From: Magallana gigas
Lineage: Eukaryota
Reading direction: 5' to 3'
Assembly (NCBI RefSeq): GCF_963853765.1
Contig: NC_088856.1
Coordinates: 27,342,001-27,406,000 of the forward strand
DNA length: 64,000 bases
Below, piece by piece: positions 1,463-53,732 of this stretch. A model generated the notes under the pieces. It searched no databases. It was not told the DNA's origin and saw nothing but the letters and a program-made list of their open reading frames with translations. How positions within the stretch are numbered: the first letter of the stretch is position 1; every line of letters starts with the position of its first letter. The translations under genes were made by a program, and so were the position numbers.

Positions 1463-3879
1463 TACTGTGGAATCATTAAATTTCATGGCAGTTTTTGTGG
1501 ATTACTTTAATTTTACAGGTTGGTGGGGACGTTTAAAATTTCGTATATTCTCTTTTCTCTCCCATACCAAAACATTCTCACAATTTGCTCATGAGCAGCT
1601 CACGTGAGGACTAACAAGATTTCCTCACGTGAGTTGCTCATGTGAGTCTTATGTGCAATTTAACATGCAAATTAGGTAAAATGCTCACGTGAGAAAAATT
1701 CTGCACACAAGCATTTTTTGCTCACGTGAGGAATAGACCTGCTCACCAAGAGTTTTGCTCACATGAGGCTCATGAGGCTTATGAGACTCATGAGGCTCAT
1801 GTGCAACAGTTGCTCACTTCAAAGACAATGGACAAAAATTGAAATTAAAATCATCAATATATATTTACATCAGTCATTTTGAAAATACAATTTCATACAT
1901 TGTTTAACATTACATTTACATAAATCTTTAGAAAGTTAACCAATAATAAATGCTGGCATGTTGAAACTTGTATTGCAGTTTGATCACTCAAAGCAGTGTA
2001 TCTCACAGACGGACTTGGAAAAAAAATCACAGTTCACAGTAGGCAAAGTTCAATTTAACCATACAAAGTAGTTCATAAGTGCTGCACCAACACTGGCTGC
2101 ATTACAATCGATCGAGGCATTCGTCTCCAACATTCCAAATGTCCTTTTTTTTACAGTCTCGTGTCTCACATGCTCTCTGATTTCACACATAAACTGTAAA
2201 CCACACAAACGGCTGACTACCAGAACATCACAATAATATCCAAATTGACACAACCAGACTTCAGCATGTATAACTTCTCCATTACTTAAATTACGTCTTC
2301 ACTTTTTTTGTTGCATCATTCATAAAATCAGCGAGCTTTTCATGGTTTTCTTCAGGTCTGTGCAACTCAGGGCAGGCCTATTGGAAAGATAAATAAATTT
2401 GATATCAGTGAAATTGTTAAAAGTTTTCATATTTCAAGCAGTTTTTAAGAAAATCATTATATAATACTGCAACTATCAATATTATCAGATTCTACACAAG
2501 AAAACATGAACTCTTTTCTCCGTGTCATAAAATCGTTAATCAGTGTTAATAATAAAAAATATGTAGTTAGAAATTATTGTCAAGTAAAATGTCAAAGAAA
2601 AAAATAACGTGTGTTTTATTACATTTGATACACCGGTATTTGCCCGATGGTCAGTTGTAAATTGTTTAACCCCGTTTTAAATGTAGATGCTAAGATCACA
2701 GTATTTCGTTTCATATTCATTCTAATTACAAACACGTTTAACTGCCATTCAAGTGATTCAAAGAATATATTTTAACAAGTTAACGCTAAACTTACTTGAA
2801 GTGCTCATACAGAAGATGCAGGGGGTGTCGACACTCGATTCATTCATTCAGATTCTTCCTCTGTTCAGCCGTGGATTTTTCACACTAAAACACTCCATAG
2901 ACGAATACCCCATTGACAACGTAGTTTTTAACCTTATCAACCGGTAGTACCGTACAGAATCAGATAATTCCCTTTTTAATTCATTTCACCGTCATCTATG
3001 ATGGTAGACAACATGGCGGAATCGAATATGAAAATTGGCGGCTGGCATTTAATCGACCAATGAGCGCGCGCGTAGCTTAGACTGGTTCCCCTGCCACTGC
3101 GTTATTTACTTCGTTTTGGGCGGGAGCGAGAACCAGACTAGCGGGTAACTTTACATTAAAACAAAAGTAAAAGTAGAAACAAACAGCTTACGAAAAATCA
3201 CAATATCAAGCGGTTTTGTCAGATTCTCATATCTAAATAGTAAGTTGAGTGATAATTGAATTTAGGAATAAAAATTAAAGAATATAACGTTACCAAAAAA
3301 AAAAAAAACGGACAGTTTTGTGTTCACGAAAAAAAAAAAAATGGGGTGGGGGAGGGGGTGTCAAAATGTACTTGTTAACAAAATTTTGCAATTGCTTACG
3401 TGAGGAAAACGGACGTATTTTTTTTTTCAATTTGATTTAACTTTGACACTGCATATACTGACTAAGTCCAATTTCCTAACCTCTTGCTCACGTGAGAAAG
3501 TTGAACTTAGAAAAAAAAATCTACCGTCAATGTATCTGTATAGCCTGTTGCTTACATGAGCAATTCGAATAGAATTTTGCTCATGAGCAATCAGGTGAGC
3601 AAATTTTTGCACATGTGCATTTTGGTTAGTATTTTCCTCCCTAACAGAGACTAACAATCTGCACATGAGCAAAATGAATTCCTACCTAATTTGCATACAT
3701 TTCTAACTAGATTCTCATGTGCTTCTCATGAGCTGCTCATGAGCATTTGTTAGAATGTTTGGTACGGGCAGTACAAAAGAAAAAGTTACTTTATTACCCT
3801 TTTTATTGATTCGTGGATGAGAGGACCTCACAAATTCCACAAAAATTGAGCCACCATGAAATCTAATGATTTCACAGGA
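1463..3879. mobile_element. ~210-bp TA-target MITE (TACTGTGG termini) split by a nested 2.2-kb insertion
   Basis: Left end TACTGTGGAATCATTAAATTTCATGGC..TTTTTGTGGA is the reverse complement of right end TCCACAAAAATTGAGCCACCATGAAATCTAATGATTTCACAG; flanks sum to ~209 bp, similar to the intact relative at 23534-23744. Confidence 0.75.
1561..3768. mobile_element. Non-autonomous CCC-ended TIR transposon (EnSpm/CACTA-like) with subterminal CTCACGTGAG/CTCATGAG repeat arrays
   Basis: TIR CCCATACCAAAACATTCTCACAATTTGCTCATGAGCAGCTCA (1561) versus CTCATGAGCTGCTCATGAGCATTTGTTAGAATGTTTGGTACGGG (to 3768); short palindromic repeats at 1585-1815 and 3395-3745. Confidence 0.8.
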
Positions 3880-13470: not shown

Positions 13471-15413
13471 TGTTGTACAGTGGGATGACAACACTGACCA
13501 ACGACAGATAAGGTAGAGTGTATCAAATCTTAAAATTATATGTATTTACTATTTCTCATCTGAAAAGAGCGTCCATTTCTTGGTATGCAGACATCTGGAT
13601 CTACCTGAAATTATGAAGATCAGAAAGTTCTAGTGAGATAATGAAAATAAAATTGTTGATCAATCTTAACACCTTAAACAATTAGTTCTGATATAAGTAT
13701 ATATTCAAGCAATTTGTTTTCATATGAACACTGATGAAAACGACCATTGCAATCCAAAGTTCTTCCGTTGTGCCGTCTCCGAAAAAGAAATGCTTCCTTT
13801 ACTTAGTCTTTGCACGATCATATTTGTTCATAAAGAACTGTGATCGTCGGATTTACTTCACAGTTTGAAGTTAGGGAGAAAAAATACATACATGTACCTA
13901 ATATTTTGGTTTTCCTGAAACTCTTAAAATCGACGTCATCATGGTCAAAGCAGCGTTTAATTTTCTTAAAATCTGAACCGATATCGATATTTTCCCGGGA
14001 TATCAAGCGAGTAAGAGACCCATAACTACTGTATGTTTGCTTACGGAGACTAACCGTAACGCGAGACTGGCTTTCAAAATATAACAGAGAGACACGATTT
14101 GATGAATCAAATTTAACTAAAACCCCTCTCCTCTTTTTATTTCCGTGATGGGGTTGGTTTTTCTCATTTGGATAAATTTTGCAATTGTTACCTGTGGTAT
14201 TGATTTGTAAGAAAATGATTTGTATATAAAAAGATATTTGTCAAAAAAAAAACCAAAAAAACCAAAAACCAAAAAAAAAACAAAAACAAAAAACAAAACA
14301 AAAAACACGTTACTGTTAATTTTAGGAGGCGATAAATCTATTTAAGATTACTCGTTAAAATAAATATCGAATGCATTTGTAAATTACTTCGAAATACAAC
14401 GAAGCTAAGAGATATACATGTGTATGTACATGTAAATGTCTCTGGAAATACTTTGGAAATGTTGGTGGTTAGAAAAAAATAGATTTATTAGTTAATGTTT
14501 AACTTTTGCATGCTATGTTTAATGTTTTTGTTTTATGTAACTCATATTCATGACATATGCCGACATGGTAATTGTCAATAAATGAATTTGATCACACCTG
14601 ATACATATCAATTTGTTGTCTAAAAACTGTGTGAAGAGAACATGTACAATCATGTACATGTATACTATATTCTAAAATAAATGTAAAAAGCACAGTATTT
14701 TGAAGCGTTTAAAGAAAAAAATTCATGATCAATAAGCATGAAAACAACACAATGCTCTGCTACCAATGAAATATAAATCAATTTAACACAAGGTCTAAAT
14801 AACTGTGATTTTCCGACAATGATGATTTTGTATTTTCAATGCAGTGTATGTATACAGACCAATCAATTGAATGAAGATGTCCATCGAGTAGGTACTAACC
14901 TAAATCTTTTATATTCTAAATCGTGTAAGGCGAAATATCAAAGTTAAAATAATTTATTGTGTTCCAATAAACGTGCAAAAATGATCAAAAACAATATATG
15001 GATTCATTGAAATGATATTCAGTGTATCTATAAAACGCAATATTATTGGAAGAATAACATAGACTATAAATTACTGTTGTGAATTCTTTAGGAAGAAAAA
15101 ACCCCCCACTTTTATACATACACAAACGCACAACAAAACGAAACGGTCAATTTGAATTGAGAATAAATCAAATAAATAATACATAAATAAAACAAATAAT
15201 AAAATGGGCGGCGTCACAGATTAGATGTTGCAATTTGAACGTTCTTCCTGTTATTTCTATCAATTAGTATTAAATCAATGTTACACGAATGCATTTTCCG
15301 TCTACGTGCAATCGATATATTTATTTAATTGATTATCGTTATCTCCACTATTTAAACGTTATATCATTTACACAATAGTACCATTATCTAGAATAATTTC
15401 ATTTCATACAGCT

Positions 15414-17806
15414 ATGCGGAACCTTTTACTCCTTTGCTCTCTTAACTTAATTTGCAGGATTTCAAGTTCGTTTTTTATAACACATTTTTATTCAAAATGA
15501 CCATTTTTTTGCTCATGCTTTTAACAATAATATTAAAAAAAATGAATTTCATTTTATAATTTTCAGTCTGCATCACATCAGAACCTTGTACGTTTTCTCC
15601 ACATACCGATGGATGTGGAAACCTTGGATGGATGTGGCAATGTGGACACCGCAACCTATCCGTGATACCCCATGGTCAGCACATACCACCAGAATATACA
15701 AACACATCATTGACTTTGGATTTATCCGGAAACCGCTTTACCACACTATCCATGGAAACATTCAACACAATTGGCCCACTTCTCCGACAACGCATCGCAT
15801 CTCTTTTATTACGAAGTAACCCCATTCAATCTATTGGAAACTTTTCTTTTCAAGCTCTACGGAATCTTTGTGAATTGGATCTTTCTAGCTGTCGTCTGCA
15901 TACGGCGTCTTTTGAAATTAATTCGCTTGCAAACCTTAATAGGTTACAGATTTTGTGTCTGCATAGTAATTCATTTCAGGTCAGAGGATACCCCGATGTT
16001 GCTATTTCAATGGCAAGGACAATAGAAAACTTGACAATTGATGTGTTTGATGGATTTCAGTTTGGTTCGCCGTTTCAAAATTTGACTAATTTGAGGATTA
16101 TCAAATTTTTCACCGGAAACTCTAAGTTCCATTTAACAAATTCCACTTTCCGTGGGTTGATAACATCTCCAATAAGGAATTTGGACTTGAAGTTCAGAAA
16201 CATGGTATATTCTGATGTAAGTGATGAAATATTTTGTTCGTTTCCTTTTTTAAGAGGTGTACATATTGAGTTTGGAGGAATGTGTGATCTGAACGTAGCA
16301 TTAAATTCGTTGAAGTGTCTTCGAAATCGGTCAATGGACCACGTTGTTGCATACGAAAATAAACCTAATGTTGTTACAAAGGCAGTATTTCTCAATAATG
16401 AAAATTGTAAATATCTATTCAATATTTGTTCCAAAAGAGTTGAACTAAGTGAGAATCGTATCGCAGGAATTTCTGACAACCCTTTAGTTACACTTATGGG
16501 TCAATGCATGGAATACTTTGATATTTCATCAAACAGGATTGAATTTATTAACCCTTGGTACATGGTGGATTTTGTGACACGATATCCAAATCTACAGGTC
16601 ATAAACATAAGCTCAAATGACGACCATTGCAATTGTGAGACTTCCTGGGTTCGCAATCACCCACAAAATTCCGCGCTAATGACAAACAATGAAGAAATCA
16701 ATGAATTCCCATTCAACGGATTTGTCTCAAATATGTTTTTCACCAACATTTCAACGATGATACATTTCAAAAAGAGAGGGGTAATTACATTTAAGATTTC
16801 CGAAACAATAACAGTGTTGCAGCTTTCAAAAAATTACTTACACCCGTTAAATGCTCTCCCTCGTTTTAATTTAAGACTCAGTATCAATGCCAAGAATTTA
16901 AAAGAATTACACTTAGTACATACTACTTTGTCATGTGAAACATTGGCACCTATTGAGGCTCCTTCGTTGGAGATCATTGACATTTCCAACAACGACTGCA
17001 GCATTATAAAAAGAAACATTTTTATCTTTGCTTTAAAATTGAGAATTTTTTGGGCATCTTATTCCAATCTACGTTTTGCTAGTAGCTTTGAACACGGAAC
17101 ACTTTTCCGTGGCCTGAAAGAATTGCGGAAAGTTGATGTAAGTCGCAATTCAATAACATATTTGCCACCAACCATGTTTGAAGATCAGGAAAATTCACTA
17201 TCAACTGTGAATTTTGATTCTAATTTGTTCTCGACAATTCCCGTGTCAAATTTGAAAAACCTTACTCACTTATATATACGTCAAAATAAAATTTCTTTTT
17301 TTACCAGAAATGATATTGAAAAAATAATGTCAATGAAAAAAGCCATTATATTCATTGAAGGAAATCCAATAAGTTGCGAGTGTACACACATTCGGTCATT
17401 GAAATGGATGAAAGAAAACCAAGACAAGTTTGGAGATTTGAATAAAACTCTATGCATCAATAAAAAGGTGCTGCTGTCGACATTTGTTCACCAAGAGGTA
17501 TTTAAAAAGTTTGAGTTGATGTGTCAGTCAGATGCTTGGTTGATAGGTTCCACATTTGCTTTGTTTTTTGTTTTGACTATTTTGCTTACAACAGCAGTTG
17601 TTAAAAGGTATCGTGTCCATGTAGATTATGTTATTTTACGCCTGCGTAGTCGATGGAAAGGCGTCATTCACGTTTCAAATTCTGACGAGTTTCGGTTTGA
17701 TGCTTTCGTCACCTACACCGAGGAAGACTACCAACTCGCCTGCATTACTTTTTACCAAGCTCTGACCAGTCTGGGTTTCAAAATCAGCATACCCGCTAGT
17801 TTGTAA
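15414..17806 (+). CDS. Toll-like receptor TLR-A (exons 15414-15465, 15567-17806; ~763 aa): signal peptide, LRRs, LRR-CT, TM, but TIR truncated before the BB loop
   Basis: Signal exon MRNLLLLCSLNLICRIS with phase-1 intron; LRRs; NPISCEC LRR-CT; hydrophobic TM; TIR box1 FDAFVTY; ends FKISIPASL* where paralogs continue DKDFLPG. Confidence 0.88.
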
Positions 17807-18599
17807 CTAGTCAGTTGTGTCCATATTGTATTTAAAGACAACTATACTCTACTTTCACTGCACACATAGATCACGAAAATCAGTAGGCCATTGACGACAA
17901 TGTTCCTGTGAAATTGTTCACCTCTTGTGTACATGTATAATATAAAATATTTTGTTTTGACGTATTTTCTATGCCGAAAATTAGATAAACTCTGTTTTTT
18001 TAGTAACCCCCCCCCCCCCCCCCCCTAAGATTTGTTATACTTTTTTTTCAATATTTATTTTACAATGTCAGAGTAATGGTCACAAAATGTGAAAAAAGAT
18101 AACAGACGTAGTGTCTTTTTCTTATCTCGAAAGCTCGAAAGAATTCACAGAAGACGAATCACTGTACTGTCTTTATTACTATGGCTTTATTACTAATACG
18201 TCTGATATAGCTAAATACATAATTATGTACAGTTAATTAAACACATTTGATGATAGGTTACACAAATTACACAAGCAATTCAGAGATTACAATTGGCATT
18301 TGGCAGCCAACAGTTCAATTCAATGTCAATGCGCCATAAATTGCTGGTAACCCTGGAAGGAGGACAGCAGTTAACCAGCGATGGCTTGTATAGCTATTCT
18401 GTATCACTCGCAAGGACCGACGCAGAGATAAAGCCATGATGTTAAGAATACTGGATTCTCAGCTGAAAGCATACAAGTAAACCAGCAGCAAAAAAAATGA
18501 AACAAAATTAGTTAAATGTCAAGATGACAACATATGTGGGCAACCTAACCTAATAGTAGGAATTATTATTAAACACATAATCCAATAGAATTAAAGTAC

Positions 18600-25506: not shown

Positions 25507-28209
25507 ATGCGGATTCTTCTACTCCCGTGCTCTCTTTATTTAATTTGCAGGATCTCAAGTTTGTTTGCTTAATTGTATATTTTGATTTAAAAGGATATTC
25601 TTTATTAATGTTTTTCAATTTTAAATAAGATGACATTCATTTTATAATTTTTAGACTGGGTCACACCAGAACCCTGTACGTTTTCCCCGCACACCGATGG
25701 ATGTGGAAACCATGGATGGATGTGGCAATGCGGACACCGTAACCTATCTGTGATACCCAATGGTCAGCACATACCACCAGAATATACAAGGACATCATTG
25801 ACATTGGACTTATCCAAAAACAGTTTTACCGCAATATCCAGAAAAACATTCAATACCATTGGCCAATTTCTTCGATCAAGAATCGCATCTCTTTCATTAC
25901 GGGGCAACCCTATTCAATCTATTGGAAATTTTTCTTTCAAAGCTCTATGGAATCTTTGTGAATTAGATCTTTCTAGCTGTCGTCTGCATACGGAGTCTTT
26001 TGAAATTAATTCACTTGCGAATCTGAATAAATTGAACATTTTATGTCTTCATAGTAATTCATTTCAGGCCAGAGGATACCCCGATGTTGCTATTTCAAAG
26101 GCAAGGACAATAGAAAACTTGACAATTGATGTGTTTGATGGATTTCAGTTTGGTTCGTCGTTTCAAAACTTAACTAATTTGAGAATTATAGAATTTTTCA
26201 CCGGAAACTCTATGTTCCATTTAACAAATTCTACTTTCATCGGGTTGATAAAATCTCCAATAACAAATTTGGAATTGAAATTCAGAAACATGATACATTG
26301 TGATGTCAGTGAAGATGTATTTTGTTCGTTTCCTTTTTTAAGAGGTGTACATATTGCGTTTAGAGGAATGTGTGATCTGAACGTAGCATTAAATTCGTTG
26401 AAGTGTCTTCAAAATCGGACCATGGACCACATTATTGTAAACGACAATAAACCAATGATTGTCACAAAGCAAGTGTTCCTCAATAATGAAAATTGCAAAT
26501 ACCTATTCAATATTTGCTCCAAAAGAGTTGAACTCAATGGAAATCGTATCGCAGGAATTTCTGACAACCCTTTAAACACAGTTATGGGTCAATGCGTGGA
26601 ATACTTTGATATTTCATCAAACAGGATCGAATGGATCAATCCCCAGATTTTAGTGGATTTTTTGACACGATATCCAAATCTACAGGTCATAAATATAAGC
26701 TCAAATAATGAACTTTGCAATTGTGAGACATCCTGGCACAACCCTTACTCACAGGTAGTAGCTTCAAGAATGACTGACAATAATGAAACCAATGAGTTTT
26801 CATCCGATGTATTTGTTGTGAATGAGTTTTTCTCAAACATTTCAAGTAAAGTACTTTTCATCAAGAGAGGTGTTATAACTATTAAGATTTCCGAAATAAT
26901 AACAGTGCTGCAGCTCTCAAAAATGTACCTACATATATTCAGTACTTTACCTCGTTATAATTTAATACTGACTATCAATGCCAAAAATTTAAAAGAATTA
27001 TACATGGTGCATAGTAATTTCTCATGTCAATCTTTGGCACCTATTCAGGCTCCTTCGTTGGAAATAATTGACATTTCCAATAACGACTGCAGCATAATAG
27101 GAGCAAACATTTTTAATTTTACTTTAAAATTAAGAGTTTTTTTGGCATCGAATTCAAATCTTCGTTTTGCTAGTAGTCTTCGATACGGAACCCTTTTCCA
27201 TGACCTGAAAAAATTACAGAAAGTTAATGTTAGTCGCAATTCAATAACATATTTGCCACCAACCATGTTTGAAGATCAGCAAAATTCGCTGTTAACTGTG
27301 AATTTGGATTCTAATCTGTTCTCAACAATTCCCGTGTCAAATTTGAAAAATCTTACTCACTTGTATTTGCGTCAAAACAAAATTTCATTCTTCACAAAAA
27401 ATGATATTGAAAGAGTAATGTCAATGGAAAAGGCTGTTGTTTTCATTGAAGGAAACCCAATAAGTTGCGAGTGCACACACATTTGGTCATTGAAATGGAT
27501 GAAAGAAAACCAAGACAGATTTGTTGATTTAAATAAAACTTTATGCATCAACACAAACGTGTTACTTTCGACATTTGGAAACCAAGAGGTATTTGAAAAG
27601 TTTGAAATGATGTGTCAGTCAGATGCTTGGTTGATAGGTTCAATTTTTGCATTTGTTTTTGTAATTGTTGTTTTGCTTACTTCAGCAGCTATCAAACAAT
27701 ATCGTGTCCATGTCGATTATGTTATCTTGCGTATGCGTAGTCGATGGAAAGGCGTCATACACGTTGCAAATTCGGACGATTTTCCGTTTGATGCTTTCGT
27801 CAGCTACACCGAGGAAGATTACCCTGCATGCATTCCTTTTTACCAAGCTCTCACCAGTCTGGGTTTCAAAATCAGCATACCCGACAAAGATTTTTTACCC
27901 GGAATATCTGAAGCGGAACAACTACTCAAATGCATGGATCAGAGTCGAAAAGTTGTCATTATTGTTACCGAAAATTTTCTAGAAAACGGCTGGAACTCCT
28001 ACGCTGTGCAAATGGTTGTAACTCATGCTTTTCACAACCAAAGGGAACGGTCGATTATAGTGATAATTAAAGATGACATTCCCATCGAGCGATTGCCAAG
28101 GGATCTGAAATATATCTGGTGGACCATTGTCAGCATAAGATGGCCAGATGGAAATGAGAACATGGATTTATTCTGGGAAGAGATTGCTGCTGCTTTACGC
28201 ACTAATTAA
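25507..28209 (+). CDS. Toll-like receptor TLR-B, full length (exons 25507-25558, 25655-28209; ~868 aa)
   Basis: Signal exon MRILLLPCSLYLICRIS, phase-1 GT-AG intron, LRRs, LRR-CT, TM, complete TIR (FDAFVSY, PDKDFLPG, SRKVVIIV, FWEEI). Confidence 0.93.
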
Positions 28210-28499
28210 AAAAAAATAGTATAAAAATGAGTTTGTGACTTGTCCGTTGTGTCCATATTGTATCTCAAGACAATAGAGAGTTTAAGCATTTGACGTTTTA
28301 CGTGTACCCATACGTGTAGAGTTAGAAGAAAGATTACAAATACCCGATCTAACAGCACATCTCGTTTAACAAACTGCATATGTATGCATATGTTTAGAGA
28401 AAGACGTCACAAACTAATCATTTGGATGGAAATTTGAAATTAACTAATCAACATTATTGTTTGATAAGTACAATCGTAAATAAAACTGTCTCAAAACTA

Positions 28500-32272: not shown

Positions 32273-32560
32273 TTTTGTAAACAATGTCAATAATGAGCAG
32301 TTAGAACGGCTATGTATGCACTGAACGGGAAATTGGAATGACCGAAGTTAAGGAAAATGACATTTTTTAGATAAAAAGCGCCAGTCTATTTAACCAGAAT
32401 CGCAGGAATATTTCACTACACNNNNNNNNNNNNNNNNNNNNNNNNNNNNNNNNNNNNNNNNNNNNNNNNNNNNNNNNNNNNNNNNNNNNNNNNNNNNNNN
32501 NNNNNNNNNNNNNNNNNNNNNNNNNNNNNNNNNNNNNNNNNNNNNNNNNNNNNNNNNNNN

Positions 32561-36911: not shown

Positions 36912-39575
36912 ATGTGGATTCTTTTACTCTTAATTTGGAGGGTTTCAGGTTAGTTTATATATAAATTTTAAATTGAAGTGTTTTCTTTGTTCATGCATTT
37001 TAATGTGAAATAAGATGTCTCCGTTTTATAATTTTCAGACTGCATCACACCGGAACCTTGTTTGTTTTCTCCACATACCGATGGATGTGGAAACCATGGA
37101 TGGATGTGGCAATGCGGACACCGTAACCTATCTGTGATACCCAATGGTCAGCACATACCATCAGAATATACAAACACATCGTTGACCGTTGATTTATCCG
37201 AAAACCGCTTTACCGCAATATCCCTGGAAACATTCAACACCATTGACTCTGTTCTCCGGTTGTGCATCACATCTCTTTCCTTACGGGGCAATCCCATTCA
37301 ATCTATTGGAAACTTTTCTTTTCAAGCTCTACATAATCTTTGTGAATTGGATCTTTCAAGCTGTCGTCTGCATATGACATCATTTGAAATTTATTCGTTC
37401 GCAAATCTTAATAGTCTGAAAATTTTATGTCTTCATGACAATTCATTTCGGGGGAGCGGTTACCCCGATGTTGCTATTTCAAAGGCAAAGACAACAGAAA
37501 ACTTGACAATTGATGTATTTGACGGATTTCAGTTTAGTTCATCGTTTCAAAATTTAACTAAAATGAGCATTATCAAATTTTTCACTGGAAGATCTAAGTT
37601 CCATTTAACCAATTCCACTTTTCGCGGGTTGATAAAATCTCCTATAATAAACTTGGAAATGATATTTAGATACAGGGTTTATGGTGATGTCAGTGAAGAT
37701 ATCTTTTGTTCTTTCCCATTTCTGAAAGGGGTGCAGATTCAGTTTGGAGGAATGTGTGATATAAGCGTAGCATTAAAATCTTTAAAGTGTCTACAAAATC
37801 GAACTATGGACCACATTGTTGCAAACGGAAATGAGCCAATGATTGCTAAAAAAGCACTGTTTCTTGATAATGAAAATTGTAAATATCTCTTTAATATTTG
37901 TTCCAAAAGAGTTGAATTAAGTGCAAATCGTATCGTGGGAATTTATTACAATCTTTTGAACACTGTGATGGGTCAGTGCATGGAATACTTTGACATTTCA
38001 TCAAACAGCATCGTATATCTCAACATATGGTACTTGACAGATTTTTTGACACGATATCCAAATCTGCAGGTATTTAACTATAGCTCAAATAATGACAATT
38101 GTAATTGTGATGGTTCCTTGCAGTATCCTTTCCAACAACTTGCAGCAACAAGAATGATTGAAACCGAAACATTTTCACAGAATGCATCCAATATTTTTGT
38201 ATCTAACAATACAAGAAAAACACATTTTAAAAAAAGAGTGATAATAACATTTAAAATGTCGGAAAAACTAACAGTGTTGCAGGTCTCCAAAAATCATGTG
38301 AAACTGTTTACTTTTCCCTCACTTTTTGATTTAGCTGTTATTGCCAAAAATTTAAAAGAATTATATTTAAATCATATTAACTTGCCATTTAAATATATGT
38401 TACCTATTCAAGCCCCTTCCTTGGAGATTATCGACATTTCGTACAATGATTGCAGGGAAATAAAAGCAGACTTTTTAATGTATACTTTAAAACTGAGAAT
38501 ATTTTTGGCATCTTATACAAATTTAAGCTATGCTGGTACTCTTAAAAATGGAACATATTTCCGTGGATTAAATAACCTTTGCATAGCTGACTTAAGCCGC
38601 AATTTGTTAACTTATATGCCAGCAGCAATGTTCGTAGATCAAAAACATTCGCTATTTACTATCAATTTAGATTTTAATTTGCTCTCGACCATTCCTGTGT
38701 CAAATTTGAAAAATCTTAAGCGCTTATATTTACGTCAAAACAAAATCTCATTTTTTTCAAGAAATGCTATTGAAAAAGTATTATCAAATGAAAAGGCTGT
38801 TGTTTTCATTGAAGGGAATCCGATAAGTTGCGAATGCACACACATTTGGTCACTGAAATGGATGAAAGAAAACCAAGACAGGTTTGGAGATTTAAATAAA
38901 ACCTTTTGCATCAACAAAAAAGTGTTTCTGTCGATGTTCCTTCGCCAGAAGGTATTTGAAAAGTTTGAGTTGGAGTGTCAATCAGATGCATGGTTAATAG
39001 GTACCTTCTTTGCATTTGTGTTGCTCATGATTGTTTTACTTACTTCAGCAGTTGTCAAACGGTATCGTGTTCATATCGATTACGTTATTTTACGCCTTCG
39101 TAGTCGATGGAAAGGCGTCATGCACGTTTCGAATTCGGACGAGTTTCGGTTTGATGCTTTCGTCTCCTACACCGAGGAAGACTACCAGCTCGCTTGCATT
39201 ACTTTTTACCAAGCTCTGACCAGTCTGGGTTTCAAAATCAGTTTACCTGATAAAGACTTTTTACCCGGAATATCTAAATCGGAACAACTACTTCAATGCA
39301 TTGACCAGAGTCGAAAAGTTGTCATTATTGTCACCGAAAGTTTTTTAGAAAACGGCTGGAACTCGTACGCGGTGCAAATGGTTGTTACCCATGCTTTTCA
39401 TAACCAAAGGGAACGGTCAATTATAGTAGTAATCAAAGACGACATTTCCATCGCGAGATTGCCTAGAGACCTGAAATATATTTGGTGGTCTATAGTCAGC
39501 ATCAGATGGCCAGATGGAAACGAGGACTTGAATAAATTCTGGGAAGAAATTGTTGCCGCTTTACGCACTGATTAA
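36912..39575 (+). CDS. Toll-like receptor TLR-C, full length (exons 36912-36948, 37039-39575; ~857 aa)
   Basis: Short signal exon MWILLLLIWRVS, phase-1 intron, LRRs, LRR-CT, TM, complete TIR. Confidence 0.93.
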
Positions 39576-44109: not shown

Positions 44110-47100
44110 ATTAACTAAAAGATCAATTGTCTTTTTAAGTCTTGTATAATGGCGAAATGGCAATAATTCTTTTCATTTTCATAGAATTAGAATTTTATCG
44201 TATTCAATACGACAAATCGGGTTTGAACGAAATATTTTTCAATATTAATCAAGCTACTAAATCACTGTGTGTATTCTTTTTAACGTCATTTCCGTAAAAA
44301 CACTCCAGACTATTGTGTTTATTCTGTATTGACAAAGGTTTGTGATCCTTCTGGTTGTTTTCCTCTGTGTTTGTAGCTATAGCAGGGTGGTATTAATAAG
44401 TGTAAATTAAGAAAACTACCCGAATACATATGATTGATAATCATTCGTAAAGATGAGGAAAAATACTAAATGGATTTGCGCCATTCATGTTGGAAACCAT
44501 TGCTCTGTTGAGTTGTTTAATCTAGCGGAAAAACGACAAAGAACTGTATCAGCTAACATTCTTTTATCATTAGTGCTATGGTTTAGTTTAAGATATAGCA
44601 GATGCATATATGTGAATTGTTTTTCACTCACTCAAAGTGATTAATCCTGCTAAAGATACAAAGTGTGTTATTCATTGATTATGATGATTTAAAACAGAAG
44701 AGAACATTGCTTATATTGTTTATGCATATAAATGACAAGCACCGATTCAGAATACAATTTTCAGTTGAAACTGCTGCTGGATTTTCATAAACACTTTAGA
44801 ACAAATATCTATGATAATATGTAAATGATACGTTAAACATTGTCAAATACACCTGTATATCTATTATATCAAATCACTTAATTACTGTATATAATTTTTT
44901 TTTAAAATTACCCCTTAGCTATCACGTTCCTGAAAGTATTTACCGGTNNNNNNNNNNNNNNNNNNNNNNNNNNNNNNNNNNNNNNNNNNNNNNNNNNNNN
45001 NNNNNNNNNNNNNNNNNNNNNNNNNNNNNNNNNNNNNNNNNNNNNNNNNNNNNNNNNNNNNNNNNNNNNNNNNNNNNNNNNNNNNNNNNNNNNNNNNNNN
45101 NNNNTGTATATTACCCGTGTGATAAACCTTTGCTATATCAAACGGGTGATGCTTTATCAAATACTTCCGGTCCGAACTATTTTTGACACAAGCCCTCGCT
45201 TCAACGCTTCAGTGACCTATTTTCGAAGATATGCTATAGTACTTTCAACATAACTATATCTATTACAAAAATTAGTATAAAATATTTTGTCAAAGATTTA
45301 AATTACAAATATGAAGTAAAACACATAACTGCGAGGCACAGGCGTCGGAACCGGGGGCTATTGTGAGTGGGGCCGGGGGGTTAGCCATTATTTTTTACCG
45401 TAACCACAAGACCCTTTTTTCTTGTTTGTCAAGATTTTTGATAAGTTTAGCCCACTTCCAACTTTCAATTTGCGTTGTGAAGTTTATAAAACTGCAAATT
45501 ACGTTAACTATCAAGGAGTTCATCTTTACGACGCGATGAAAACAGAGCGCTCTGGTTGTGTTTATATACAAGAACTTAACGAAATAATGTTTCATAAGAC
45601 TTTTATTCCACCACCAGTAAGCATCCTTATTCACTATTTTCAATTTCGAATCATAAGGCTAGGCTAGTGTTTGTTTTATTAAACATCAACAACTTTTCCT
45701 CGTTCGAGTCAATTCAAACTAACGAGCATTCGCAACTTTGTGTATGTCAACAACCTTGATTATTCAAGTCTTCTAATCGGAATTTCCATTTAATTTAGAG
45801 AATAAGCGCTAAGAAAAATTATGTAGAGCTAAAAAATTATTTTAAGGTTTATTTCAGTGAAACTTTACATTAAAACAGTTAGATTTATCTCAGGAATGCC
45901 GGTATTGTTTTAACTTAAAACTTATTTTCCTAAATCCTTTTCTAATAAATAACTAAAAATGCAGTAACTAGAAACATTTCTGGTTAAACAAGCTGAAAGA
46001 AGCCAGTAAAAATCTATCTAAAGATAAGACAGATGAAAGTCTGCAGTTCTGCACTCATCTCACCGATTCGGTAAATACATGTATTGTTTAATTTCTCATA
46101 AGTTTAGATAACAAGTGCTTGTATTTCCTAACACACTCTTGATATTAAGTAAAACGCTGCATTTACAAGTACAAAATGAATCTGATATGCCCTTAAAAAA
46201 CACAATTCCTTATTTTTATTCTTAACTAGGCGGAGTCTAATTATTTCTACCCTATATATTTTGATGAAATATCTTGCATGTAGTTTTACCGTTATATCAA
46301 TTGTTTTTAGATAAAACAAAAAATTAACGGCCCCTATTTCCTATGTAGTCTTGAATGTTGTCAAATGTTTAGAAGGCACTATACGGGAATTTGTTGAAAA
46401 TGCGCTAAATCTCATTTTTCCGCATACATATTTTTTTTTTATCTCTGCCCATTATTTTTTTCGACCGATTGATTTATTGTTTAGAACTGATCGTGAGGGT
46501 TTCAGCTCTGTCAGTATCTATAGAGCTATGATTCACGCTTGGTTTTTTATGAATTGGAGAGACACAACTGGGTGTGTAAAGTACAAATCAAACAAATAAA
46601 TGCTTTCTCATGTGATTTATGCACGATATGAAGGTGGCAACATTGCAAAAGAATAAAATAAATGAATAAATATAATTAACATAACACGCCCTAGCGGTTA
46701 ATGTAATTTTTTTCTGCGATTATCGCTACCGTCATAACCCGTATGAATCATAAATGGAAGTATTTTGTTGTTTCAATTTACATCCTGCATGATTTCTAAA
46801 TATACGTTACAAACAAAAACTAAACGATAAAAAAAATTGTACATTATGTTCATGCATGTTTTTAATACAAGATTTTTTAAGTCGCACGCATTATGTTTAA
46901 AAAAGTGAGAAACTGTTATCGTGCCTGTACCTACGGTGTCGCAAGTGTTCGGAATATTTTTCTAAACATGAGTAGTTAGTGATAATGTATTACTAAAAAT
47001 GTTTGACATCATAATTACAGCTCATATTTTTACAACCATATATAAAATTATTGACTCCCTATTTTCTGCTATAATACCGATAAATCCTGATCGAAAAAAC

Positions 47101-51015: not shown

Positions 51016-53732
51016 ATGCAAATTTCTTTACTTTTTGGCTTGTTATCTTTAATTGGTAAGGATTTTAGTTCAGGTATGTTTTTTATCTATATTTTCATAT
51101 AATTATTTTTCTCAGATGATATTTGTTTAATTCAACTTAAAAATAATGTAACTATACAACATTTTCTTTCTTTGATAAAGAAGTAATCAGAAATTCATCA
51201 AAATCTTGTATCATGTCAATGCACACCGATGGATGTGGAAATCGTGGACTGTTGTGGCAATGTGGCAACCGTAACCTATCTGAAATACCTGAGCACATTC
51301 CATTAAAATATAAAGGAGAATTTGTGACATTAGACCTATCTGAGAATCAGTTTACAAGAATCACAATGGAAACTTTTCACAATATTGACCCACGTGTTCG
51401 ATCTCGCATTACATCTATTTCATTACGGAATAACCCTATTAGACATATAGGAAACTTTTCTTTTCAGTGTCTTTGGCGTTTATGTGAATTGGATCTTTCT
51501 ACATGTCACCTTCAGAGGACGTCTTTTGAAATAAACTCCTTTGGAAATTCCCTTCTAAATCAATTAAAAATATTAAGACTGCATAATAACTCATTTCGTG
51601 GCAATGGATACCCTGATACTGCTATTTCGAAAGCGAAACTGTTAGAAAACTTGACCCTCGATGTGTTTGGTGGTTTTACTTTCAGTTCATATTTTCAAAA
51701 TTTAACGAAACTGAAGAAAATTGAATTCATCACCGGAAATTCTAAATTCCATCTAACGAATTCCACTTTCCGCGGGTTGATAAAATCTCCTATAGTAAAC
51801 CTGGAAATGATTTTTAAATTCAGGGTATATAGTGATGTCAGTGACGATATCTTCTGTTCGTTTCCATTTCTGAAAGCGGTGCATATTGAGTTTGGAGGAA
51901 TGTGTGATTTGAATGTGGTATTAAAATCTTTAAAGTGTCTTCAACATCGGACAATGGACCGCATTGTTGCATACAACAATAATCCAATGATTGCCAAAAA
52001 TGCAGTATATCTCGATAATGAAAATTGTAAATACCTTTTCAATATCTGTTCCAGAAGAGTTGAACTAATAAAGAATCGTATTGTGGGAATTTATGACAAT
52101 CTTTTGAGCACAGTCATGGGTCAGTGCATGGAATACTTCGATGTTTCATCAAACAGGATTAGAGTTATCAACCCCTGGTACATGCTGGATTTTTTGACAC
52201 GATATCCAAATCTGCAGGTCTTCAACTATAGCTCAAATGCTGATCAATGCAATTGTGAATCTCCCAGGTATAGCCATCGCCCAACACTTGCAGCTTTGAG
52301 AATGATCGACTGTGAAAACGATAAATTTTCACAAATTGCTTCAAATATGTTTGTATCCAACGTTTCAGGTAAAACATATCTTAAAAAGAGAGGGTTAATG
52401 GCATTTAAGATTTCCGAAAAAATAAGAGTGTTAAATTTTTCCAAAAACTATTTAAACCGATTAACATATCCTTTACCTTTTGATATCTCGCTTAATGCCA
52501 TGAATTTAAAAGAATTGTATGTAGTTCGTACTAACTTCCCATGCAAATACATGGCACCCATTCAAACTCCTTTCTTGGAGATTCTCGACATTTCCAACAA
52601 TGACTGCAGCGAAATGAAAATGCGAATTTTAATGTTTGCCAAGAAACTACGGATTTTTGTGGCATCTAATATAAACCTAAGCTTTGCTGGTAGTTTAAAA
52701 TATGGAAAACTTTTCCGTGGTGTTATGAGCCTTTGCAAAGTTGACTTAAGTCGCAATTCGTTAATATATTTGCCACCAGCCATGTTTAAAGATCAGGAAA
52801 AATCTTTATTAACAGCGAATTTTGATTATAATCTGTTTTCAACAATTCCTGTTTCAAATTTGAGAAACCTTACTCGGTTGTATTTACGTCATAATAAAAT
52901 TCCATTCTTCACTAGAACGGATTTTGAAAAAATATCGACATTGGGAAAGTCTGTTGTTTTTATTGAAGGAAATCCGATAAATTGCGAGTGTACAAACATT
53001 TTGTCACTGAACTGGATGAAAGAAAATCAAGACAAGTTTGGGGATTTGAATAAAACTCTATGCATCAACCAAAATGTGTTCCTGTCGAACTTTTTTCAGG
53101 AACAGACATTTAAAAAGTTTGAGTTGATATGCCAGTCAGATGTTTGGTTGTTAGGTTCCTCATTTGCATTGGTTTTTGTTATAATCATTTTGCTTACGAC
53201 AGCAGCTATTAAAAGATATCGTGTTCATGTTGATTATATTATTTTACGCATGCGCAGTCGATGGAAAGGGGTTATGTGCATGGCGAATTCTGAAAAGTTC
53301 CGATTTGATGCTTTCGTCACATACACTGAGGAAGACTACCAACTCGCCTGCATTACTTTTTACCAAACTCTCGTCCGTCTTGGTTTCAAAATCAGTATGC
53401 CTGATAAAGACTTTTTACCCGGAATATCTGAAGCGAAACAACTACTTCAATGCATCGACCAGAGTCGAAAAGTTGTCATTATTGTCACCGAAAATTTTCT
53501 AGAAAACGGCTGGAACTCGTATGCTGTGCAAATGGTGGTTACTCATGCTTTTCACAACCAAAGGGAACGGTCGATTATAGTGATAATTAAAGATGACATT
53601 TCCCTCGAGCGGTTACCGCGAGACCTGAAATATATTTGGTGGTCCATTGTCAGCATAAGATGGCCAAATGGAGACGAGACTATGGATAAATTCTGCGAGG
53701 AGATCTGTGCTGCTTTACGCCCCGATCCATAA
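51016..53732 (+). CDS. Toll-like receptor TLR-D, full length, second subtype (exons 51016-51073, 51181-53732; ~869 aa)
   Basis: Signal exon MQISLLFGLLSLIGKDFSS, phase-1 GT-AG intron in frame with the 839-aa ORF; LRRs, LRR-CT, TM, complete TIR. Confidence 0.92.

What the first reader, a model, noticed from the sequence alone, without database searches (positions are those of the whole stretch)
15414..17830. TIR-deleted TLR with an intact ectodomain: candidate decoy or dominant-negative receptor heading the array
Seen: TLR-A keeps an uninterrupted ~763-aa frame (signal peptide, all LRRs, LRR-CT, TM, TIR box 1). At 17795 it jumps from ATCAGCATACCCG to AGTTTGTAACTAGTCAGTTGTGTCCATATTGTAT, which is the 3' flank of TLR-B (28230 onward). 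About 345 bp (B 27884-~28227) is missing, removing ~108 aa including the BB loop (DKDFLPG) and the rest of the TIR, and a new stop follows ASL. Established: the BB loop is required for MyD88 recruitment, and TIR-less TLR/IL-1R forms act as decoys in other animals. Inference: a membrane-anchored ligand-binding but signalling-dead paralog could tune the neighbouring receptors, or it is a very young pseudogene.
Basis: partly seen in the sequence, partly recalled or inferred. Interest (0 to 1): 0.8.

Follow-up and report, generated by a model that had tools for sequence, protein, structure and literature searches.

The report
Oyster TLR allele missing its TIR
The first of four tandem oyster Toll-like receptor genes has lost most of its signalling (TIR) domain in this assembly, but every other dataset examined keeps it and two other copies carry different frameshifts, so it looks like an ordinary loss-of-function allele, not an evolved decoy receptor.

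Summary
TLR-A (exon 1 15414-15465, exon 2 15567-17806) encodes exactly 763 aa: signal peptide, LRR ectodomain, TM helix and only the first ~34 residues of the TIR domain. At 17795 the gene jumps into its own 3' flank.

Compared with an intact allele of the same gene (Logan contig L001), 346 bp are replaced by 2 filler bases (CT). This removes the BB loop (DKDFLPG) and everything after it. The new tail reads ASL-stop.

The decoy interpretation is not supported.
- The missing A-specific sequence is absent from the whole assembly.
- It is present in every other dataset I could examine: three sequencing runs (two species labels, one RNA library), two Logan contigs, and older C. gigas protein records (XP_019923087.1, K1QQT5).
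- None of the three runs showed a contig across the junction.
- The two longer intact-TIR contigs each carry a different frameshift: 11 bp in the ectodomain and 7 bp in the TM segment.
- No full-length intact A protein turned up in the protein-collection search.
- Long-term dN/dS is about 0.3, the same as the paralogs, so the lesions are young.

Best reading: a private or rare loss-of-function structural allele of a TLR paralog with several segregating disabling alleles. This is typical of bivalve immune-gene arrays. An assembly artefact remains possible. Interest is low.

The parts
15414..15465 (+). TLR-A exon 1: start codon and signal peptide (MRNLLLLCSLNLICRIS), phase-1 donor A|GT
   Evidence: Homologous exon 1 of B is confirmed by protein P0001.
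15466..15566 (+). Short intron (GT...TTTTCAG), conserved in position in B, C and D
15567..17806 (+). TLR-A exon 2: LRR ectodomain, LRR-CT, TM, TIR stub and new stop. With exon 1 the product is 763 aa. The ORF from ATG 15632 (724 aa) is the protein on record in NCBI/UniRef (P0024).
17534..17602 (+). Transmembrane segment AWLIGSTFALFFVLTILLTTAVV
   Evidence: read from the translation
17693..17794 (+). Residual TIR: box 1 / beta-A (RFDAFVTY), alpha-A, beta-B (FKISIP). About 34 of about 140 TIR residues.
   Evidence: alignment to the intact allele and to TLR1/2/6/15 TIR structures. No Pfam TIR hit.
17795..17798 (+). Deletion junction: last matching base 17795, filler CT at 17796-17797, match resumes at 17798. 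346 bp of the intact allele (L001 3239-3584) are missing.
17795..17806 (+). New C-terminus GCT AGT TTG TAA (A S L stop), read from former 3' UTR
17798..18190 (+). Retained 3' flank of A (97% to L001 3585-3968). Contains a length-variable poly-C tract at about 18005-18022.
16284..16294 (+). Site of an 11-bp frameshifting deletion (GTGATCTGAAC) in another A allele (L001, run SRR327432). Intact in the window.
17560..17566 (+). Site of a 7-bp frameshifting deletion (one unit of the TTTGTTT tandem) in a third A allele (L014, run SRR13528980). Intact in the window.
25507..28209 (+). TLR-B, closest paralog (79% aa), full TIR. The stretch homologous to the deletion is about 27885-28229.
36912..39575 (+). 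TLR-C, full-length paralog with TIR
51016..53732 (+). TLR-D, full-length paralog with TIR

Best explanation
TLR-A is a young tandem paralog of an oyster (Crassostrea/Magallana gigas-type) Toll-like receptor. In the haplotype captured by this assembly, an end-joining-type deletion removed 346 bp and left 2 filler bases. This took out the TIR domain from the BB loop to the stop codon, plus 21 nt of 3' UTR. Translation runs three codons into the former UTR.

This is an allele, not the state of the gene. Other oysters carry the TIR-coding sequence at this locus. Two other sampled haplotypes are disabled by different small frameshifting deletions. So the gene is best seen as a dispensable member of a redundant immune-gene array that carries several segregating loss-of-function alleles (incipient pseudogenisation).

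If the reference allele is expressed, it would give a membrane LRR protein that cannot form a TIR fold or recruit MyD88. Any dominant-negative effect would be incidental.

Shown: the anatomy, the breakpoints, the existence of intact-TIR alleles, and the other lesions. Inferred: the end-joining mechanism, the rarity of the allele, and its lack of function.
For: 1. Anatomy and breakpoints.

2. Sequence absent from the assembly. The 30 nt that precede 17798 in other individuals (the end of an intact A TIR CDS) are absent from the window and from the whole 564-Mb assembly. The 346-bp segment matches the assembly only at B (91%), D (89%) and C (85%).

3. Sequencing runs. In X2, X9 (a different species label) and X15 (an RNA library), the contig covering 17798-18323 carries 65-74 further upstream bases that do not fit the window. 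The ones printed (X2, X15) read as that intact end; X9's were not printed. Depth in bin 17794-17920 equals that single contig, so no junction-bridging contig is present.

4. Intact-TIR contigs.
- L001 (run SRR327432) is 96.5% identical to window 14559-17795 and 97% to 17798-18190, and holds a full TIR.
- L014 (run SRR13528980) is 98.5% identical to 16810-17795 and also holds a full TIR, 96.5% identical to L001's.
- XP_019923087.1 and K1QQT5 (older C. gigas records) have the same intact TIR.

5. Independent lesions: an 11-bp frameshift in L001 and a 7-bp frameshift in L014.

6. No full-length intact A protein was returned by the protein-collection search. Only fragments of 181-724 aa appear.

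7. Selection.
- Ectodomain dN/dS is 0.305 for A-B, against 0.27-0.29 among B, C and D.
- The A branch comes to about 0.32 and the B branch to about 0.30 (my three-taxon arithmetic from the distances).
- The TIR of the intact allele gives 0.17-0.21.
- The two alleles differ by 17 synonymous and 21 nonsynonymous changes (omega 0.32).
The lesions are therefore recent.

8. Context: tandem duplication and presence-absence variation of bivalve TLRs are documented (PMC10279657, PMC7653742).
Against: - I could not lay the reference individual's own reads, so the junction has no independent read support.
- Logan contigs drop rare variants, so absence of the junction in three runs does not give a frequency.
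- X2, X9 and X15 show neither the 7-bp nor, as far as listed, the 11-bp deletion. Fully intact and functional A alleles may therefore be common, in which case 'pseudogene' overstates it.
- Long-term dN/dS shows constraint, not decay.
- The two frameshifts rest on single short-read contigs each.
- The species of runs SRR13528980 and X9 is not known to me.
Confidence: 0.72

Rival explanations
1. Assembly artefact. The reference individual has an intact A TIR, and the 346-bp gap with CT filler was created by mis-assembly or polishing.
For: - No independent read or contig supports the junction.
- X2 contigs are identical to the window over 15000-17749 (0 differences), yet that run carries the intact TIR end.
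- Paralogs share k-mers around 17750-17795 (depth spike), which makes this a hard spot for assemblers.
Against: - Clean breakpoints with a 2-nt filler and no repeat or microhomology at the ends look like a biological end-joining deletion, not a collapse.
- No displaced copy of the segment exists anywhere in the assembly.
- Flanks on both sides are collinear with the intact allele.
- The record's annotation already carries the truncated ORF.
Confidence: 0.13
2. Functional decoy or dominant-negative receptor. The TIR-less, membrane-anchored A protein binds ligand or heterodimerises with B, C or D and damps signalling. It would be kept by selection, possibly as a balanced polymorphism.
For: - The ectodomain, TM and signal-peptide exon are uninterrupted in this haplotype.
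- The stop lies in the last exon, so nonsense-mediated decay is not expected (inference).
- The A locus seems transcribed at a low level in one RNA library (X15 contigs over the CDS and 3' UTR), though DNA carry-over is not excluded.
- TIR-less receptors of this superfamily act as negative regulators in vertebrates (RP105/CD180, IL-1R2; my own knowledge, not checked here).
Against: - The deletion is seen only in this assembly; all other datasets have the TIR.
- Other alleles destroy the ectodomain or the TM instead. That is not expected if the ectodomain of a decoy were under selection.
- There is no divergence since the deletion on which selection could be measured.
- Polarised changes on the reference branch are 11 nonsynonymous to 5 synonymous (omega about 0.6, my arithmetic from the counts and site numbers; few counts).
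- A 34-residue TIR stub cannot fold and may be degraded (inference).
- A poly(A) RNA run gave no properly laid reads (X24, about 1% of the run read).
- The annotated protein lacks the signal-peptide exon.
Confidence: 0.07
3. The intact-TIR contigs come from a separate, near-identical paralog (A') that is missing from this assembly, rather than from alleles of A. In that case A's deletion could still be fixed.
For: L001 differs from the window by 3.5%, which is high for alleles in most animals. Copy-number variation is common in bivalve immune arrays (PMC7653742).
Against: - L001 is collinear with the window over 855 bp of 5' flank, the intron, the CDS and 393 bp of 3' flank.
- In X2, X9 and X15 the only contig on A's 3' flank (0.2-0.6% different) is the one joined to the intact TIR end. 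Its depth (10-12) is not above the CDS contigs (15-23), so there is no second copy and no junction copy.
- Synonymous divergence of 0.04 between alleles is usual for oysters (my own knowledge).
Confidence: 0.05

Closest known systems
Bivalve tandemly expanded single-cysteine-cluster-type TLRs (C. gigas records named 'toll-like receptor 4', 'toll-like receptor 8' and 'Toll-like receptor 6': P0001, P0002, XP_019923087.1, K1QQT5)
   Same: Same locus and family. The layout is a signal-peptide mini-exon plus one large exon encoding LRRs, LRR-CT, TM and TIR. A is 79% identical to B. Intact A alleles have a TIR that aligns over its full length to TLR1/2/6/10/15 TIR structures (E down to 2e-16).
   Different: The window's allele lacks about 106 of about 140 TIR residues, including box 2 / the BB loop and box 3. 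It has no Pfam TIR hit.
TIR-less negative regulators of the TLR/IL-1R superfamily (RP105/CD180, IL-1R2 decoy, soluble TLR5/TLR2 forms)
   Same: The predicted product has a ligand-binding-type ectodomain and a membrane anchor, without signalling capacity.
   Different: Those are fixed, conserved genes or regulated isoforms with orthologs and demonstrated function. Here the truncation is a single-haplotype deletion of a gene whose other alleles keep the TIR or are broken elsewhere.
Presence-absence and loss-of-function polymorphism of immune genes in bivalves (Mytilus pan-genome, PMC7653742; TLR repertoire analysis, PMC10279657)
   Same: A tandemly duplicated, highly polymorphic TLR array in which individual copies are dispensable and differ between haplotypes.
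   Different: This is a partial-gene deletion plus small frameshifts, not whole-gene presence/absence. Population frequencies were not measured here.

Membership tests
Toll-like receptor (LRR-TM-TIR) | Leucine-rich-repeat ectodomain | tested here: met
   Pfam LRR_8 (1.5e-17), LRR_4 and LRR_1 in A. The ectodomain is collinear with B over residues 1-721 with no stop.
Toll-like receptor (LRR-TM-TIR) | Signal peptide and single transmembrane helix | tested here: inconclusive
   A hydrophobic exon-1 peptide and a 23-residue hydrophobic segment are read from the sequence. No predictor was run. Splicing of exon 1 is shown only for B and C through database proteins. The annotated A protein omits exon 1.
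Toll-like receptor (LRR-TM-TIR) | Complete cytoplasmic TIR domain (boxes 1-3, BB loop) | tested here: not met
   No TIR or TIR_2 hit in A, while B, C and D score 1e-7 to 1e-10. Only box 1 to beta-B is retained. The feature is met in alleles L001, L014, P0025 and P0026.
Evolved TIR-less decoy receptor (RP105 / IL-1R2-like) | TIR-less state fixed in the species or conserved in orthologs | tested here: not met
   Intact-TIR A sequence was found in three runs, two Logan contigs and older protein records. No junction contig was seen.
Evolved TIR-less decoy receptor (RP105 / IL-1R2-like) | Purifying selection on the ectodomain after loss of the TIR | tested here: inconclusive
   Long-term omega is 0.3, but it pre-dates the deletion. 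The reference-branch polymorphism is 11 nonsynonymous to 5 synonymous, which is too few to test.
Evolved TIR-less decoy receptor (RP105 / IL-1R2-like) | Expression of the truncated form | not testable with these tools
   The only RNA contigs (X15) carry the intact form. The poly(A) run X24 gave no properly laid reads. No RNA from a carrier of the deletion was available.
Pseudogene or segregating loss-of-function allele | Disabling lesion relative to functional paralogs or alleles | tested here: met
   A 346-bp deletion removes about 76% of the TIR.
Pseudogene or segregating loss-of-function allele | Independent disabling lesions on other haplotypes | tested here: met
   An 11-bp frameshift in L001 and a 7-bp frameshift in L014. 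Each rests on one contig.
Pseudogene or segregating loss-of-function allele | Relaxed constraint (dN/dS near 1) | tested here: not met
   Omega is about 0.3 on the A branch, the same as the paralogs. So this is a young or polymorphic loss, not an old pseudogene.

The most novel reading that the evidence does not exclude
The TIR-deleted allele is a real, expressed variant kept at intermediate frequency because its membrane-anchored, signalling-dead product heterodimerises with TLR-B, C or D and lowers inflammatory signalling in carriers. That would be a balanced 'decoy allele' inside an invertebrate TLR array.
Probability: 0.05. Interest if true: 0.7.

Novelty: new member of a known kind. Interest (0 to 1): 0.17.

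Why it matters
Mainly as a caution. A single reference haplotype of a hyper-polymorphic bivalve can show a neat 'domain-loss receptor' that is really an allele-specific lesion. The annotation already carries it as a 724-aa protein.

The locus is a compact example of a redundant TLR array in which three sampled haplotypes of one paralog are each disabled in a different way. It could serve as a marker set for studying loss-of-function load or presence-absence dynamics in oyster immunity.

It does not open a new mechanism.

Tried and rejected
- Exact scans of JGI metagenome contigs for the deletion junction and, as a control, for the intact right-hand junction both returned nothing. The collection simply lacks this locus, so the result is uninformative.
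- The search of earlier findings by place and by words gave nothing relevant.
- Literature searches for TIR-less or decoy TLRs in oysters found no specific report. Only general papers on TLR expansion and presence-absence variation turned up.
- tblastn of B against the window found no further TLR fragments.
- A chimeric Logan contig (A body plus B tail) was considered and rejected. L001's 346 bp are only 91% identical to B but 96.5% identical to the independent contig L014. Their 3' end is also the sequence seen in X2 and X15.
- Replication slippage or unequal crossing-over was considered for the 346-bp deletion and rejected. The breakpoints share no repeat or microhomology.
The best DNA holder (X1), the reference individual's own reads and the state at 16284 in X2, X9 and X15 could not be examined.

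Full report
**What is in the window**

Four + strand ORFs of 724, 829, 837 and 839 aa lie at 15.6, 25.7, 37.1 and 51.2 kb.
- Pfam finds LRR families in all four. It finds TIR and TIR_2 only in B, C and D.
- Upstream of each large exon is a short conserved exon that encodes a hydrophobic signal peptide, followed by an intron of about 100 nt.
- For B and C this splice is confirmed by database proteins that begin MRILLLPCSLYLICRIS-NWVTPEPC and MWILLLLIWRVS-DCITPEPC.
- Sequencing-run labels and protein hits identify the organism as an oyster of the Crassostrea/Magallana gigas group.

**The junction**

A tracks B, C and D up to ATACCCG (17795) and then diverges. From 17798 it resembles B's 3' flank (28230 on), but only for about 44 nt.

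A better comparator turned up in the protein search.
- P0003, from a Logan contig of run SRR327432 (L001), is 98% identical to A over residues 235-721. It then continues with a complete TIR, DKDFLPG...AAAILT*.
- L001 aligns to window 14559-17795 at 96.5% and to 17798-18190 at 97%.
- Its bases 3239-3584 (346 nt) are replaced in the window by CT.
- The breakpoints share no repeat or microhomology, which fits an end-joining deletion with filler (inference).
- The intact TIR aligns over about 140 residues to TLR1/2/6/10/15 TIR structures. DKDFLPG lies opposite ERDFKPG / ERNFVPG, the BB loop.
- The window's allele keeps only about 34 of those residues.

**Is the deletion the state of the gene?**

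No.
- The 30 nt preceding 17798 in other animals are absent from the window and from the entire 564-Mb assembly.
- The 346-nt segment matches the assembly only at B (91%), D (89%) and C (85%).
- I laid contigs of three runs from three studies: X2 (organism A), X9 (organism B) and X15 (RNA library). In each, the contig covering 17798-18323 carries 65-74 extra upstream letters that do not fit the window. The ones printed (X2, X15) read as that intact end; X9's were not printed.
- Contigs that end at 17795 run on as ACAAAGATTTTTTACCCGG.
- Depth in the junction bin equals the single flank contig, so no junction-bridging contig is present.
- A second Logan contig (L014, run SRR13528980) is 98.5% identical to 16810-17795 and also has a full TIR, 96.5% identical to L001's.
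- Older C. gigas records (XP_019923087.1, 540 aa; K1QQT5, 199 aa) have the same intact TIR.
- The window's own 724-aa ORF is on record as an NCBI/UniRef protein on a single 57.9-Mb contig.

**Other lesions**

- L001 carries an 11-bp deletion (window 16284-16294) that frameshifts the ectodomain.
- L014 lacks one unit of a TTTGTTT tandem (17560-17566), which frameshifts the TM segment.
- The protein-collection search returned no full-length intact A. Only fragments of 181-724 aa appear, while B and C appear as full-length proteins of 868 and 857 aa.
- X2, X9 and X15 do not show the 7-bp deletion, so intact alleles may well exist.

**Selection**

NG86 estimates:

| Comparison | dN/dS |
|---|---|
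| Ectodomain, A-B | 0.305 |
| Ectodomain, among B, C and D | 0.27-0.29 |
| A branch since the A/B split (my three-taxon arithmetic from the distances) | about 0.32 |
| B branch (same arithmetic) | about 0.30 |
| TIR part of the intact A allele against B, C, D | 0.17-0.21 |
| Reference and L001 alleles, ectodomain (dS 0.044; 17 synonymous, 21 nonsynonymous) | 0.32 |

Polarised counts are 11 nonsynonymous to 5 synonymous on the reference branch and 8 to 5 on the L001 branch. These are too few to test.

A was therefore a constrained, complete TLR until recently, and all the lesions are young.

**Expression**

- X15 (an RNA library) has contigs over much of the CDS and 3' UTR, all of the intact form. 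DNA carry-over cannot be excluded.
- A poly(A) run, of which about 1% was read, gave no properly laid reads.
- Nothing is known about expression of the truncated allele.

**Verdict**

The decoy interpretation is not.

The most likely reading (about 0.72) is a private or low-frequency structural loss-of-function allele of a dispensable TLR paralog that carries several independent disabling alleles. This fits the known tandem expansion and presence-absence dynamics of bivalve TLRs (PMC10279657, PMC7653742).

| Rival reading | Probability |
|---|---|
| Assembly artefact | about 0.13 |
| Selected decoy | about 0.07 |
| Unassembled near-identical paralog | about 0.05 |

Reads of the reference individual and population genotyping would settle it.

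Noticed in passing
window 16284-16294 versus L001 1738: Another A allele (Logan contig of SRR327432) has an 11-bp deletion that frameshifts the ectodomain. This probably explains why the older C. gigas models for this gene are N-terminally truncated (540 aa and 199 aa).
   Followed up: partly
window 17560-17566 versus L014 about 752: A third A allele (Logan contig of SRR13528980) lacks one unit of a TTTGTTT tandem inside the transmembrane segment. This frameshifts the gene, while its TIR is intact.
   Followed up: partly
window 36912-36948 (TLR-C exon 1): The signal-peptide exon of C is 15 nt shorter than in A and B (MWILLLLIWRVS). The database protein P0002 uses it.
   Followed up: no
P0010 (C. 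angulata LOC128161263), homolog of TLR-D at 51213-53732: The sister-species protein closest to D is only 532 aa and ends inside the ectodomain (…FKDQENLY). This may be another truncated member of the same array.
   Followed up: no
window 15632-17806: The protein on record for A (724 aa, NCBI/UniRef) starts at MWQCGH and omits the exon-1 signal peptide that the sequence supports.
   Followed up: partly
window 18005-18022: A poly-C tract in A's 3' flank varies by 7-9 nt between runs and contigs.
   Followed up: no
window 18302-18428: Contig depth of 117-139 against about 20 nearby in two DNA runs. This looks like a dispersed repeat just downstream of A.
   Followed up: no
L001 3239-3584 versus window 27885-28229: Synonymous divergence between A (intact allele) and B is lower in the distal TIR (0.19) than in the ectodomain (0.36). 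This could reflect past A/B gene conversion in the TIR.
   Followed up: no
window 32422-32560 and 44948-45104: Two N runs (139 and 157 nt) lie between the TLR genes.
   Followed up: no
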